This document shows positions 3,933 to 19,824 of a stretch of DNA of 64,000 bases, piece by piece (positions within the stretch are counted from its first letter, which is position 1; each line of letters starts with the position of its first letter). The DNA lies in sequence record ON000910.1, one strand, 5' to 3'. The notes beneath the pieces are model-generated. The model searched no databases. It saw only the letters and a list, made by a program, of their open reading frames with translations, and had not been told where the DNA came from. The translations under genes were made by a program, and so were the position numbers.

Positions 3933-4082
3933 TTGATTGTATATCTTCTCGCACTAGTATTCATCGTCCTCTTTGCCTTGGACATTGAAGAAGAAAAGGT
4001 GCGCATTCATACTTTTGCGCTAATCATATGCGAACGGGTCATTCATCCCGTAAATAAAGCGCACGATTTCAGGTTGTGTTGA
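3933..4082 (+). CDS. Small putative membrane peptide (TTG start)
   Basis: GAGGTG SD 6 nt upstream; hydrophobic N-terminus IVYLLALVFIVLFAL. Confidence 0.4.
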   Translation: MIVYLLALVFIVLFALDIEEEKVRIHTFALIICERVIHPVNKAHDFRLC

Positions 4083-4156
4083 TTAGCTAAGGCAAAATAA
4101 ACTAGAGAATTTTTGGTGCTTGTGATTAACCACAAGCACTCTCAAGAACATATTGA

Positions 4157-4281
4157 GCAGGGTTGGTGTAGTGGCTAGCACACGTAGCATAAACGCAAGC
4201 TGTTAAGTTTGTATTCTGCAATCAATTTAGCATATCATTTCCAAGATCGTGACGCAGGTTCGAATCCTGCACCCTGCTCAA
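4157..4281 (+). ncRNA. tRNA chimera 2: Gly-like scaffold (G1-C72, U73, TTCCAA loop, 3' CAA) with 49-nt insert
   Basis: GCAGGGT/ACCCTGC, T arm GCAGG-TTCGAAT-CCTGC; insert 4185-4233 contains GCAAGC-TG-TTA-A-GTTTGT-AT-TCTGCAA. Confidence 0.8.
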
Positions 4282-4403: not shown

Positions 4404-4521
4404 GGTGAAGTTAGTTCAGTAGGTTAGAACGCCGGCCAAAAAAAACGAAGTCTGATAAGATTTCATTCTGCATTCACATGCACGCCGGAGGTCGCAGGTT
4501 CGAGTCCTGCACTTCACCTTC
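4404..4521 (+). ncRNA. tRNA chimera 3: Asp-like scaffold with insert in the anticodon loop, no encoded CCA
   Basis: GTTC-AGTAGGTTA-GAAC D arm, CCGGC/GCCGG stem, T arm GCAGG-TTCGAGT-CCTGC; insert contains GAAGTC-TG-ATA-A-GATTTC-AT-TCTGCAT. Confidence 0.78.
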
Positions 4522-4528
4522 AAATTCT

Positions 4529-4653
4529 GGAGAGTTAGCTCAGTCTGGTAGAGCAAAAGAATGTTAAAGAATACTGACAAGCATTCATGCTGCAAACCTT
4601 AATAACTAGGTAAATCTTTTTGTCACGTGGTTCAAATCCCGTACTCTCCACCA
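4529..4653 (+). ncRNA. tRNA chimera 4: scaffold with AAAGA/TCTTT anticodon stem enclosing a 54-nt expanded loop
   Basis: GGAGAGT/ACTCTCC-ACCA, GCTC/GAGC D arm, TTCAAAT T loop; insert contains GAATAC-TG-ACA-A-GCATTC-AT-GCTGCAA. Confidence 0.78.
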
Positions 4654-6540: not shown

Positions 6541-6656
6541 AGTCGGGTAGCTCAGTGGTAGAGCACGAAGAATGATACTGACAAGTATCGCTCCAGCACT
6601 CCTTCAATTGCCTGTTAAGCACGTGGTCGCTGGTTCGAATCCAGCCCCGACTACCA
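6541..6656 (+). ncRNA. tRNA chimera 5: Asn(GTT) scaffold with 41-nt insert in the anticodon stem
   Basis: Removing 6568-6608 gives CGTGC-CTGTTAA-GCACG and a 75-nt cloverleaf with ACCA; insert contains TGATAC-TG-ACA-A-GTATCG-CT-CCAGCAC. Confidence 0.82.
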
Positions 6657-8818: not shown

Positions 8819-8895
8819 TGCGGAGTAGAGCAGCGGTCAGCTCGCCAGTTTCATAAGCTGGAGGTCAGTGGTTCGAATCCACTCTCACGCATCCA
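8819..8895 (+). tRNA. tRNA-Met(CAT), initiator-like D arm, irregular acceptor stem
   Basis: GAGC/GCTC D stem, loop TTCATAA, extra A in 3' acceptor strand, TCCA; lacks the GGG/CCC pairs of fMet. Confidence 0.7.
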
Positions 8896-9223: not shown

Positions 9224-9282
9224 AGTAATCTTACAGCAAACAATACAAAACTTTTATTTGGAAAAAGCAAAAAGGATTACTG
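9224..9282 (+). ncRNA. Minimal GCAA-motif RNA
   Basis: A-GTAATC-TT-ACAGCAA ... GATTAC-TG with an A-rich loop. Confidence 0.7.
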
Positions 9283-9292
9283 TTTAAATTTA

Positions 9293-9368
9293 GGATCGCT
9301 AACTCAATGGTTAGAGTGCTCGCCTGTTAAGCGAGGAGTTCCGAGTTCGAGTCTCGGGCGGTCCGCCA
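9293..9368 (+). tRNA. tRNA-Asn(GTT)
   Basis: Loop CTGTTAA, GCCA. Confidence 0.92.
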
Positions 9369-9438
9369 AATTCGGAGAGTCACTACCGTTAAGTGTGAAC
9401 TTGAAAAAAACAAAGCAACTACTTTAAGTTGTCTTTGG

Positions 9439-9514
9439 GGAGCCGAGGTGTAAAAGGTTGCATGTCTCCCTGTCACGGAGAAGGTAGCGGGTTCGAAACC
9501 CGTCGGTTCCGCCA
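9439..9514 (+). tRNA. tRNA-Asp(GTC)
   Basis: Loop CTGTCAC, GCCA. Confidence 0.9.
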
Positions 9515-9533
9515 AAGATAATTTAAGAACAAT

Positions 9534-9607
9534 TGGGGATTGGTGTAAAGGCAGCATAACGTACTTTGAATGCGTTGGTATCAGTTCGAATCTGTTATCC
9601 CCAGCCA
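9534..9607 (+). tRNA. tRNA-Gln(TTG)
   Basis: Loop CTTTGAA, T1-A72, GCCA. Confidence 0.9.
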
Positions 9608-9615
9608 AATACCAT

Positions 9616-9732
9616 AGAGTGTTTTCAGCAAACAATTTACTAATATTCTTCTGATGAAAAGAAAAGTTCGGGGTTCGATTCCTCTTCAGTGTCGGTATCA
9701 CTGGTCTGGACGACGCTAGTAATAACACTCAG
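9616..9732 (+). ncRNA. GCAA-motif RNA enclosing a T-loop module (YrlA-like layout)
   Basis: A-GAGTGT-TT-TCAGCAA ... ACACTC-AG; internal GGGG-TTCGATT-CCTC and CAGTG/CACTG hairpins. Confidence 0.72.
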
Positions 9733-9736
9733 TTAC

Positions 9737-9811
9737 GCTCCTGAAGCATTGATGGCGATGCAGCGGTCTTGTAAACCGCAGAATTCGGTTCGATTCCGAA
9801 CGGGAGCACCA
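9737..9811 (+). tRNA. tRNA-Thr(TGT)
   Basis: Loop CTTGTAA, ACCA. Confidence 0.9.
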
Positions 9812-9836
9812 TATTGATTAGAGAGTGTTATCATGA

Positions 9837-10382: not shown

Positions 10383-10457
10383 GGGCCGTTAGCTTAATTG
10401 GGAAAGCGCCTCACTTGCAATGAGGAAGATAGGGTTCGACTCCCTGCGTGTCCACCA
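10383..10457 (+). tRNA. tRNA-Ala(TGC), irregular acceptor stem
   Basis: Loop CTTGCAA, G3-U70, ACCA. Confidence 0.8.
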
Positions 10458-18301: not shown

Positions 18302-18394
18302 AAAAAAAGTGTTTACACGCATTAAAATTCGCGTATAATCACTTCATCAAAGACATTTTACAGCAATTAATTATGAGGAAATGAACAATGTCAG
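18302..18394 (+). promoter_or_regulatory. Early promoter plus GCAA-motif leader enclosing SD and AUG of the Ro60-like gene
   Basis: GTTTAC (18311)-17 bp-TATAAT (18334); A-GACATT-TT-ACAGCAA-TTAATT-ATGAGGAAATGAAC-AATGTC-AG, with ATG 18388 inside the 3' strand. Confidence 0.8.
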
Positions 18395-19824
18395 TATTTA
18401 TGAACGCAATGCAAACAAACGATTCACGCACAGCAAACGGTGCAGTTACTCACAGCACTTCAGGTAACGAGTGTCTAAACTTGTTCTTCGGTATTGCTGC
18501 TATGCGTGGCAACGATCAGTCTAAAACACTGTTCGGTCGTGCGTTTGCAGAAAACCCAGAACTAGCGACACGCATTCTTTTGTGGTCTCGTGATGTTCGC
18601 GGTGGTGCGGGTGAACGTGGTACTTTCCGTACTCTATTCACTAAACTTTGTAATGAACAGCCTGACGTAGCTCGTGCTGTAATGTCGAAAATTCCAGAAC
18701 TAGGTCGTTACGATGACTTAATTTCTGCTTTCGGTACACGTCTTGAACAAGATGCGATCACAATGTGGTCGAACGCAATTGTCAATGACAAGAATGGTCT
18801 TGCTGCGAAGTGGTTCCCACGTGAAAACAGCAAAAACGGTCATGTGTTCAAGCGCACAATCAAGTCTCTTGGCGTGACTGCGAAGCAGTGGCGTAAGATT
18901 CTGTCGCTTCTGTCTGACACTGTTGAGCAGAAGATGTGTGCGCAAAAATGGGATGCAATCGACTTCGGTAAGTTGCCTTCTGTAGCGTCTGCTCGTTATC
19001 AACAAGCATTCGGTCGTAACGCTTCAGCTCGTTACACAAGCTACATCGAGTCACTTCAAAAAGGTGAAGCGAAGATCAACGCTGGCGCATTGTTCCCATA
19101 CGATGTCGTTAAGAGCGTTAGTCACGGTAATGCGTCTGTAGCGAACGAGCAATGGAAAGCTCTGCCAAACTACATGGAAGGTTCTGATGAGCGCATCATC
19201 CCTGTTGTTGACGTGTCTGGCTCTATGAGCACGCCAATCAACGCAGGTACTGATCATTCAGGTGTGACTTGTAAGCAAGTTGCAATGTCTCTGGGTGTAT
19301 ATGTTGCTGAACGCAACGAAGGCATCTTCAAAGATCAATTCATTTCGTTCTCAAGCGACCCGCACTTCCACCAGTTGCGCGGTAGCTCATTGAAAGAGCG
19401 TCTTGATAACATGAATCGTTCAGGCGAAGACATGAGTACGAACATCGGTAAGTGCTTTGATGTTCTGCTAGAGCGTGCGAAGCGTGCAAATCTTTCACAA
19501 GAAGATATGCCAACCAAGTTGCTTATCATGAGTGACATGGAATTCGATCAAGCAAACACTGGTGGTGGTTGGTACGGTCGCGGTGAACCTGCGAACTTCG
19601 ATGCAATCAAAGCCAAGTACGCACGTGCTGGTTATGAAATGCCACAACTGGTCTTCTGGAACATTCGTGGTCGTCTTGGCAACGTTCCGGTTAAAGCTGG
19701 TGAAGCGGGTACTGCACTGGTATCTGGTTGTAGCCCATCTATCTTGACTTCACTGTTGGGTGGTGAGCTTGAGCCAATCAAGATCATGATGAAAACTGTA
19801 GGCGTCGAACGCTACAGCTTTTAA
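18388..19824 (+). CDS. DUF2828 family TROVE/Ro60-like protein with C-terminal vWA (MIDAS) domain
   Basis: T.NGA..HSTSG, RDVRGG.GER..FR, AAKW.PRE, KINAGALFPYD, PVVDVSGSM, SDMEFD, P.LVFWN motifs. Confidence 0.85.
   Translation: MSVFMNAMQTNDSRTANGAVTHSTSGNECLNLFFGIAAMRGNDQSKTLFGRAFAENPELATRILLWSRDVRGGAGERGTFRTLFTKLCNEQPDVARAVMSKIPELGRYDDLISAFGTRLEQDAITMWSNAIVNDKNGLAAKWFPRENSKNGHVFKRTIKSLGVTAKQWRKILSLLSDTVEQKMCAQKWDAIDFGKLPSVASARYQQAFGRNASARYTSYIESLQKGEAKINAGALFPYDVVKSVSHGNASVANEQWKALPNYMEGSDERIIPVVDVSGSMSTPINAGTDHSGVTCKQVAMSLGVYVAERNEGIFKDQFISFSSDPHFHQLRGSSLKERLDNMNRSGEDMSTNIGKCFDVLLERAKRANLSQEDMPTKLLIMSDMEFDQANTGGGWYGRGEPANFDAIKAKYARAGYEMPQLVFWNIRGRLGNVPVKAGEAGTALVSGCSPSILTSLLGGELEPIKIMMKTVGVERYSF

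What the first reader, a model, noticed from the sequence alone, without database searches (positions are those of the whole stretch)
9616..9732. Motif RNA enclosing a T-loop module, closest to the YrlA layout
The motif helix forms the terminal stem and encloses GGGG-TTCGATT-CCTC plus two hairpins. A protein-binding stem is thus joined to a tRNA-elbow-like domain, the organisation reported for YrlA Y RNAs.
Basis: partly seen in the sequence, partly recalled or inferred. Interest (0 to 1): 0.65.

Follow-up and report, generated by a model that had tools for sequence, protein, structure and literature searches.

The report
Pseudoknotted tRNA-like phage Y RNA
The spacer between two tRNA genes of a KVP40-like Vibrio phage encodes a conserved, folded small RNA laid out like bacterial YrlA (a tRNA mimic on a protein-binding stem); it is the likely partner of the phage's own Ro60-like protein and carries a pseudoknot that the searches here did not find described.

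Summary
The whole tRNA-Gln/tRNA-Thr spacer (9608-9736) is one structured RNA:
- a 7-bp terminal stem followed by UUCAGCAA
- a V-like hairpin
- a canonical T-arm
- an acceptor-like hairpin
- a miniature D-arm
- a 5-6 bp pseudoknot between the 5' leader and the acceptor-like loop

The element is conserved in about 30 Schizotequatrovirus/Mylasvirus genomes. A wider family exists in uncultured phages, where all helices and the pseudoknot covary.

The order V-T-AS-D inside a terminal stem is the YrlA layout of Chen et al. 2014. The window gene at 18388-19824 (DUF2828/DUF7788) folds as Ro60. Its family includes the mycobacteriophage 'Ro-like' proteins, and it co-occurs with these RNAs.

The RNA does not match Rfam YrlA and lacks the GNCGAA motif, so I file it as a new variant and not as a member. 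Protein binding, a discrete transcript and T-loop modification remain untested.

Earlier reports of this scan described the same motif/Ro60-like system on neighbouring DNA of this window. This element and its pseudoknot are additional to those.

The parts
9534..9607 (+). tRNA-Gln(UUG) with encoded CCA; its 3' end abuts the element
   Evidence: ARAGORN; Rfam
9609..9613 (+). 5' leader AUACC, 5' strand of the pseudoknot (pairs with 9694-9698)
   Evidence: Invariant in 8 vibriophages. Five complementary leader/loop classes exist across the family.
9617..9623 (+). P1 5' strand GAGUGUU (terminal 'motif' stem)
   Evidence: 6 of 9 P1 pairs have compensatory changes in 30 sequences.
9624..9635 (+). UUCAGCAAACAA module next to P1; the presumed protein-recognition element
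   Evidence: UUCAGCAA was the search anchor for the IMG/VR relatives, so its presence there is by selection; independent of that it is invariant in the 8 vibriophages found by BLAST. The same module is seen in other window RNAs. It also lies beside Ro-like genes of Mycobacterium, Escherichia and Listeria phages.
9646..9663 (+). P2, V-like (anticodon-arm-like) hairpin UUCUU / CUGAUGAA / AAGAA; the loop is not conserved
   Evidence: The stem is invariant while the loop varies. The stem covaries in the wider family.
9669..9685 (+). T-arm: GGGG / UUCGAUU / CCUC, flanked by a C-U mismatch
   Evidence: Pair 9670-9684 occurs as GU, AU, CG and GC. T-stem covariation. A natural variant G9671A turns G-U into A-U.
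9687..9703 (+). P4, acceptor-stem-like hairpin CAGUG / UCGGUAU / CACUG; the loop GGUAU (9694-9698) is the 3' strand of the pseudoknot
   Evidence: Two compensatory pairs within the vibriophages. The stem sequence is entirely different yet complementary in relatives.
9704..9714 (+). P5, miniature D-arm GUC / UGGAC / GAC that keeps the GG
   Evidence: It aligns with the full D-arm GUGU-AAUGGUA-GCAC of relatives. The D-stem covaries there.
9715..9723 (+). 3' linker GCUAGUAAU (A-rich linker in relatives)
9724..9730 (+). P1 3' strand AACACUC
9731..9736 (+). 3' tail AGUUAC, ending at the RNase P site of tRNA-Thr; (A/U)GU(U/A)A is recurrent in the family
9737..9811 (+). tRNA-Thr(UGU); its 5' processing would set the element's 3' end
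18388..19824 (+). Ro60-like protein gene (DUF2828 + DUF7788, TROVE-like ring plus vWA); the presumed partner
   Evidence: Pfam; PHROG 'RNA-binding protein'; AF2; Foldseek to Ro60/Rsr/phage Ro60

Best explanation
The Gln-Thr spacer encodes a roughly 125-130-nt non-coding RNA of the Y RNA / YrlA type. It is transcribed with the tRNA array. It is probably freed by the enzymes that mature the flanking tRNAs, with RNase P at tRNA-Thr setting its 3' end.

It has two modules:
- Module 1 is the 7-bp terminal stem with the adjacent UUCAGCAA and the 3' AGUUA tail. This is the likely docking site for the phage's Ro60-like ring protein (gene at 18388-19824).
- Module 2 is a circularly permuted tRNA body: a V-like hairpin, a T-arm, a capped acceptor-like stem and a mini D-arm that keeps GG. 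This would form a tRNA elbow.

A pseudoknot between the 5' leader and the acceptor-like loop ties the two modules together.

By analogy with Ro60-Y RNA particles, the RNA would gate the protein or tether it to tRNA-recognising or RNA-degrading enzymes. This could serve RNA quality control or repair during infection.

Shown here: the structure, its conservation and covariation, the Ro60 fold of the protein, and genomic co-occurrence. Inferred: binding, processing, elbow formation and biological role.
For: Conservation:
- 82-100% identity in 30 phage records, always filling the Gln-Thr spacer.

Structure:
- Compensatory changes in the T-stem and P4.
- In 30 diverse sequences, P1, T and D are 93% paired against 38-47% slid, covariation score 0.457 against 0.150, 0 of 500 shuffles as high.
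- Pseudoknot: five leader/loop classes (AUACC/GGUAU, GACCA/UGGUC, AUCCCA/UGGGAU, GUGCUA/UAGCAC, UUUGUC/GACAAA). Each class matches its own partner over 5-6 bp and the others over only 2-4 bp.

Layout:
- The V-T-AS-D order equals that of YrlA.
- A tandem paralogue in locus L013 hits Rfam YrlA over the full model at E 1.7e-7.

Protein:
- AF2 model pLDDT 79; its 13 best PDB matches are all Ro60, Rsr or Thermus-phage Ro60, with E down to 2.5e-7.
- It is homologous to mycobacteriophage 'Ro-like RNA binding protein'.

Linkage:
- 5 of 5 whole phage records holding this RNA type encode the protein, against 710 of 50,697 phage records overall.
- The gene lies in the short flank of 28 of 124 loci.
- In 6 of 6 pseudoknot-class cases the gene is 1-5 kb downstream on the same strand.
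- The CAGCAA stem module lies beside the Ro-like gene in Mycobacterium phage Winky, Escherichia phage EC6 and a Listeria phage.

Transcription:
- No promoter or terminator of its own.
Against: - No experiment links this RNA to the protein.
- Co-occurrence could reflect shared residence in large, tRNA-rich phages.
- The gene is 8.7 kb away in this window.
- There is no match to Rfam YrlA or to any other family.
- The Ro-binding motif known from YrlA (GNCGAA) is absent.
- The D-arm is reduced to 3 bp with a 5-nt loop, so a canonical T-loop/D-loop elbow is uncertain.
- The single-sequence folding energy is unremarkable.
- RNA evidence is one 272-nt contig (9484-9755) from an oligo-dT seawater metatranscriptome. 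It spans the flanking tRNAs, may be DNA carry-over and shows no ends.
Confidence: 0.62

Rival explanations
1. It is a stable tRNA-cluster RNA that works without the Ro60-like protein, comparable to T4 species 1 and 2 RNAs (rnaC, rnaD). For example, it could be a decoy or sponge for host tRNA-binding enzymes or anticodon nucleases, or a folding and processing aid for the tRNA precursor.
For: - Same genomic niche as T4 rnaC/rnaD, inside the tRNA cluster.
- T4 rnaC also has a terminal stem and a perfect T-arm.
- The element lies 8.7 kb from the Ro60-like gene.
- The tRNA-like body is the best conserved part.
Against: - The covariance model of the element finds nothing at rnaC or rnaD.
- T4 rnaC has no CAGCAA; rnaD has only ACAGCAG near its 3' end, in a different position.
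- The P1/UUCAGCAA module shared by unrelated scaffolds tracks the Ro60-like gene across phages of Actinobacteria, Firmicutes and Proteobacteria.
Confidence: 0.2
2. It is a precursor of a split or permuted tRNA-like molecule. RNase P would cut in the acceptor-like hairpin and CCA would be added, as reported for M. smegmatis YrlA, giving an RNA that could be charged or used in translation.
For: - The T-arm followed by an acceptor-like hairpin mimics the acceptor/T minihelix.
- In relatives the hairpin is 7-8 bp, the length that Chen et al. link to RNase P cleavage.
Against: - Here the hairpin is only 5-6 bp.
- Its loop is engaged in a covarying pseudoknot and carries no CCA.
- The P2 loop varies in length (6-8 nt) and sequence, so there is no conserved anticodon.
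Confidence: 0.07
3. It is a decaying tRNA gene or a neutral spacer with chance pairing.
For: - It sits in a tRNA array and keeps a T-arm.
- KVP40 records annotate several pseudo-tRNAs nearby.
- The folding z-score is not significant.
Against: - The length and all helices are kept across genera, with compensatory changes.
- Homologues with the same non-tRNA features (P1 module, pseudoknot) occur in unrelated uncultured phages.
Confidence: 0.03

Closest known systems
YrlA, the bacterial and phage Y RNA-like tRNA mimics (Rfam RF02553; Chen et al. 2014, PMC4201824)
   Same: - A terminal stem formed by the 5' and 3' ends.
- Inside it, the order V, T-arm, acceptor-like stem-loop, D-arm.
- A canonical UUCGA T-loop.
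- Encoded on the same strand as a Ro60-fold protein, whose family includes the mycobacteriophage Ro-like proteins.
   Different: - No hit to the Rfam model.
- UUCAGCAA next to the stem in place of GNCGAA(N)G.
- A covarying pseudoknot between the 5' leader and the acceptor-like loop.
- The D-arm is reduced to 3 bp.
- The element is embedded in a tRNA array 8.7 kb from the gene.
- The partner is of the DUF2828/DUF7788 type, not an annotated TROVE protein.
Yrl1 and Yrl2 of Thermus phage phiLo, bound by phage Ro60 (PMC12135203)
   Same: Phage-encoded small RNAs paired with a phage Ro60-fold protein. That protein's structure (9L5Y, 9KOP) is among the best matches of the window protein's model.
   Different: The phiLo RNAs are described as a stem-bulge-stem with a CGAA motif, and a tRNA-like domain is not mentioned. 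Here there is a CAGCAA module plus a tRNA-like body and a pseudoknot.
T4 species 1 and species 2 RNAs (rnaC, rnaD)
   Same: Stable small RNAs encoded inside the tRNA cluster of a T4-type phage. rnaC has a terminal stem and a T-arm.
   Different: No sequence or model similarity. In rnaC the T-arm abuts the 3' strand of the terminal stem, as in a normal tRNA. There is no CAGCAA module. Function is unknown (PMC3014915).
Dictyostelium Class I RNAs (Rfam RF01414)
   Same: A short stem joining the ends, followed by ...UUACAGCAA. The simple hairpin copy of the window motif at 9225-9282 scores 31.8 bits on this model.
   Different: That score is below the gathering score. The target element itself does not hit. 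There is no tRNA-like domain in Class I RNAs. The relationship was not tested.

Membership tests
YrlA (Rfam RF02553) | Covariance-model score at or above the gathering score of 69 bits | tested here: not met
   No YrlA match on 9605-9740 even at E<=10 with lax filters. Caveat: a YrlA-shaped RNA beside the Ro-like gene of mycobacteriophage Winky is also missed at E<=0.1, so the model is narrow.
YrlA (Chen et al. 2014) | T and D stem-loops with an acceptor-like stem-loop between them and a V stem-loop upstream of T, all inside a terminal stem | tested here: met
   The order is P2 (V), T-arm, P4 (AS), P5 (D) inside P1. P5 aligns with full D-arms of relatives.
YrlA (Chen et al. 2014) | GNCGAA(N0-1)G motif near the 5' end (putative Ro60 contact) | tested here: not met
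   The sequence after the 5' stem is UUCAGCAAACAA. There is no GNCGAA in the 5' part.
YrlA (Chen et al. 2014) | Encoded within about 4 kb of a Ro60 orthologue, on the same strand | tested here: inconclusive
   Same strand, but 8.65 kb upstream of the Ro60-fold gene. In relatives the RNA lies 1-5 kb upstream on the same strand in 6 of 6 cases.
YrlA / Y RNA | Bound by the Ro60 orthologue | not testable with these tools
   Only co-occurrence is available: 5 of 5 records against 1.4% of phage records overall.
YrlA | tRNA-type modifications (pseudouridine 55, dihydrouridine) made by tRNA enzymes | not testable with these tools
   The T-loop UUCGAUU fits the TruB/TrmA consensus by sequence only.
tRNA (Rfam RF00005) | Cloverleaf with acceptor, D, anticodon and T arms in the normal order | tested here: not met
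   Not called by ARAGORN. No RF00005 hit at E<=10. About 40 nt lie between the T-arm and the 3' strand of the terminal stem.
T4 rnaC / rnaD stable RNAs | Sequence or structure homology to the T4 genes | tested here: not met
   Model R1 finds nothing at T4 70908-71171 (locus L010).

The most novel reading that the evidence does not exclude
The element represents a distinct, widespread class of phage Y RNAs. In this class a covarying leader-to-acceptor-loop pseudoknot locks a permuted tRNA body onto a CAGCAA-type Ro-binding stem. The class would act as the adaptor that brings host tRNA-processing, repair or decay enzymes to a phage Ro60-like / YkuK-nuclease particle, protecting or policing the phage's own large tRNA set against host tRNA-targeting defences.
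Probability: 0.25. Interest if true: 0.8.

Novelty: new variant of a known kind. Interest (0 to 1): 0.55.

Why it matters
Ro60-Y RNA particles are well studied in animals and in a few bacteria, but their role in phages is barely explored.

- The Ro60-fold protein family is found in 1.4% of sequenced phages. Hosts include Escherichia, Salmonella, Listeria, Staphylococcus, Mycobacterium and Vibrio.
- Current RNA databases do not recognise its likely RNA partners.
- This element gives a compact, well-defined member of about 125-130 nt with a clear covariation-supported fold in a cultivable phage-host pair.
- That makes it a practical entry point for asking what the tRNA-like half of a Y RNA is for.
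- It also explains a conserved 'empty' spacer in the KVP40-group tRNA cluster.

Tried and rejected
- Rfam scans of the window, of the 9.5-kb tRNA region and of the element alone gave nothing for the element. The only hits were weak C/D-box snoRNA matches caused by UGAUGA in the P2 loop, which is not conserved.
- My first reading was a homologue of T4 rnaC/rnaD. I rejected it as homology and kept it only as an analogy of genomic niche.
- The MFE pairing CAGC/GCUAG is not conserved, because most relatives have GCAAG.
- A possible extra helix UUAC/GUAA (9637-9640 with 9719-9722) is invariant in vibriophages but has no counterpart in distant relatives, so I did not adopt it.
- I first read the GG of the P4 loop as a D-loop mimic. 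I replaced this with the pseudoknot once relatives showed a separate true D-arm and leader/loop covariation.
- phmmer of the protein against PDB sequences found no Ro60.
- Single-sequence AF2 failed with pLDDT 38. An alignment was needed.
- MAFFT did not align P4 or the pseudoknot in one register across clades. Those were therefore analysed by an anchored parse in Python. That parse requires perfect stems, so its '100% paired' for P1 and P4 is by construction. The T-stem, and P1/T/D on the MAFFT alignment, are free of that bias.
- RNA-seq gave only assembled contigs from an oligo-dT metatranscriptome, with no information on ends or strand.
- The ORFs overlapping the element (9327-9728 minus strand, 9689-9817 plus strand) run across tRNA genes and were dismissed.

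Full report
**Context**

The window is from a KVP40-like vibriophage. It is 100% identical over the tested stretch to Vibrio phage XZ1 and 99.8% to ValKK3, genus Schizotequatrovirus. Positions about 4-13 kb hold a large tRNA array: 26 ARAGORN calls and 29 Rfam tRNA hits. The finding lies exactly between tRNA-Gln (9534-9607, CCA encoded) and tRNA-Thr (9737-9811).

**Observation**

- GAGUGUU (9617-9623) pairs with AACACUC (9724-9730).
- This stem encloses GGGG-UUCGAUU-CCUC (9670-9684).

RNAfold and RNAalifold add three hairpins:
- P2: UUCUU/AAGAA (9646-9663)
- P4: CAGUG/CACUG (9687-9703)
- P5: GUC/GAC (9704-9714)

The folding energy of the single sequence is no better than shuffles (z -0.14 and -0.62), so the case has to rest on comparison.

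**Close relatives**

The 129-nt spacer is present at 82-100% identity in 30 phage records. These include KVP40, VH7D, VS1 and nt-1 (genus Mylasvirus), and the spacer is unannotated in most.

In 8 distinct sequences every helix is kept:
- T-stem pair 9670-9684 occurs as G-U, A-U, C-G and G-C.
- Two P4 pairs change on both sides.
- The P2 stem is invariant while its loop varies in sequence and length.
- 99.6% of cells pair, against 43-65% when partners are slid.

A metatranscriptome contig carries G9671A, which turns a G-U pair into A-U.

**Wider family**

An IMG/VR pattern scan fixed only UUCAGCAA, the T-loop and GGUAU. It found three uncultured-phage relatives. A looser scan, using UUCAGCAA plus the T-loop, returned 119 loci.

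A covariance model of the vibriophage element (R1) recovers 33 matches at E<=0.001 in 93 sources. Of these, 5 are the vibriophage sequences it was built from and 28 are new.

Parsing these gives one shared architecture:
- 5' leader
- P1
- UUCAGCAA
- P2
- a 4-5-nt 'variable loop'
- a 5-bp T-arm
- a capped hairpin of 5-8 bp
- 0-4 nt
- a D-arm (typically GUGU-AAUGGUA-GCAC)
- an A-rich linker
- the P1 3' strand
- an (A/U)GU(U/A)A tail

The vibriophage P5 aligns with that D-arm and keeps its GG. It is therefore a shrunken D-arm, as also in two other T4-sized contigs (L018, L037).

On a plain MAFFT alignment of 30 sequences:
- P1, T and D are 93% paired, against 38-47% slid.
- 11 of 18 pairs have compensatory changes.
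- The covariation score is 0.457 against 0.150, with 0 of 500 shuffles as high.

**Pseudoknot**

The nucleotides just 5' of P1 are complementary to the P4 loop in every clade, with different sequences:
- AUACC(R)/(Y)GGUAU in the KVP40 group and in L012-L014
- (U)GACCA/UGGUC(A) in about 21 sequences
- AUCCCA/UGGGAU in L025 and L049
- GUGCUA/UAGCAC in L018
- UUUGUC/GACAAA in L037

In a class-by-class matrix the diagonal is 5-6 Watson-Crick pairs and the off-diagonal 2-4. Loop shuffles reach the observed length in 0.5-9% of trials per class.

In the window itself the pairing is 5 bp (9609-9613 with 9694-9698), followed by an A-C mismatch.

**Comparison with YrlA**

Chen et al. 2014 define YrlA by four features:
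- a terminal stem carrying a GNCGAA(N)G motif
- nearly invariant T and D stem-loops
- an acceptor-like stem-loop (AS) between them
- a less conserved V stem-loop upstream of T

They also require that it is encoded within about 4 kb of Ro60 on the same strand.

The present RNA has the same V-T-AS-D order. In locus L013 the orthologue of this element is preceded by a paralogue with a canonical D-arm. That paralogue matches the whole Rfam YrlA model at 39.8 bits, E 1.7e-7, which is below the gathering score of 69.

The element itself gives no YrlA hit at E<=10 and has UUCAGCAA where YrlA has GNCGAA. I therefore treat it as YrlA-like in design but not as a member of the curated family.

One control matters here. 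A YrlA-shaped RNA directly downstream of the 'Ro-like RNA binding protein' gene of mycobacteriophage Winky carries UACAGCAA after its stem. It too is missed by the Rfam model at E<=0.1. The model is therefore narrow.

**The protein**

ORF 18388-19824 matches Pfam DUF2828 and DUF7788 and PHROG 850 'RNA-binding protein'. Sequence search against the PDB finds no Ro60, and single-sequence AF2 fails.

With a 37-sequence alignment the model reaches pLDDT 79 and pTM 0.77. Its 13 best Foldseek hits are all Ro60, over the full length (TROVE ring plus vWA), with E from 2.5e-7 to 1.2e-3 and TM about 0.5-0.57. The hits are:
- Xenopus and human Ro60
- D. radiodurans Rsr
- Thermus phage phiLo Ro60

Next to it lie a YkuK-type RNase H-like gene and, upstream, a cREC gene.

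**Linkage**

- Homologues of the protein occur in 710 of 50,697 phage records (1.4%). They include mycobacteriophage proteins annotated as Ro-like.
- All 5 whole phage records that I tested because they hold a pseudoknot-class RNA encode the protein at 45-48% identity.
- The gene lies within the short fetched flank of 28 of 124 pattern-selected loci.
- In the six pseudoknot-class cases it is on the same strand, 1-5 kb downstream of the RNA.
- The stem-plus-(U/A)(U/A)CAGCAA module sits beside the gene in Winky, in Felix-O1-like phage EC6 and in a Listeria phage.
- A published transcriptome of a related Listeria phage reports abundant unexplained RNAs within 2 kb upstream of its Rsr-like gene (PMC12282133).
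- Thermus phage Ro60 has been shown to bind phage Y-like RNAs and host PNPase (PMC12135203).

**Expression**

There is no promoter-like site pointing into the element above background, and no terminator. This fits co-transcription with the tRNAs.

The only RNA data are Logan contigs from an oligo-dT seawater metatranscriptome. A 272-nt contig covers 9484-9755.

**Earlier notes of this scan**

Earlier notes had already proposed a Ro60-like protein plus a CAGCAA motif on other stretches of this window. They redirected me from my first idea, an analogue of T4 rnaC/rnaD. I re-tested the protein fold, the motif and the linkage myself.

**Verdict**

This is a real, conserved, structured RNA. It is YrlA-like in design, probably a Y RNA of the phage Ro60-like protein, and a new variant of a known kind. 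Binding and function are unproven.

Noticed in passing
window 4405-4518, 4529-4650, 6541-6653: Rfam tRNA hits of 113-122 nt. For the first two, the alignments show 46-49 extra nt inside the anticodon arm, and those inserts carry CUGCA motif variants. The third was not inspected. Earlier reports of this scan cover them.
   Followed up: partly
window 9225-9282: A simple hairpin copy of the motif (GUAAUC-UUACAGCAAACAA...GAUUAC) lies between tRNA-Trp and tRNA-Asn. It scores 31.8 bits (E 0.007) on Rfam Dictyostelium Class I RNA, below the gathering score.
   Followed up: no
window 8820-8891 and 10383-10454: Rfam calls these tRNAs (55.1 and 44.9 bits) but ARAGORN does not. The second corresponds to KVP40 'tRNA-Pseudo-1'.
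   Followed up: no
window 18340-18390: The leader of the Ro60-like gene contains CAUUU-UACAGCAA...GAGGAAAUG. CAUUU can pair with AAAUG over the ribosome-binding site and start codon.
   Followed up: partly
L137 969-1520 (Listeria phage vB_Liva_VAfA18): A ROOL RNA match (89.8 bits, E 3e-17, just below the gathering score) lies between a tRNA and the Ro60-like gene, upstream of AACAGCAA motif copies.
   Followed up: no
L135 about 3955-4260 (Mycobacterium phage Winky): Three (U/A)ACAGCAA stem RNAs lie directly downstream of the Ro-like gene. The middle one has a T-arm, an acceptor-like hairpin and a D-arm. None is detected by Rfam YrlA at E<=0.1.
   Followed up: partly
L136 4262-5050 (Escherichia phage EC6): Four copies of CAGAAGACCG(U/A)U-UACAGCAA...CGGUCUGG lie within the tRNA array just downstream of the Ro60-like gene of a Felix-O1-like phage.
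   Followed up: no
window 9651-9658: The P2 loop reads CUGAUGAA, a C-box-like UGAUGA that causes weak snoRNA hits. It is not conserved in relatives, so it is probably meaningless.
   Followed up: yes
L004 (Vibrio phage QD01) and other records: Some GenBank records annotate a hypothetical protein on the minus strand across this spacer and the neighbouring tRNAs. This is almost certainly a spurious ORF.
   Followed up: partly
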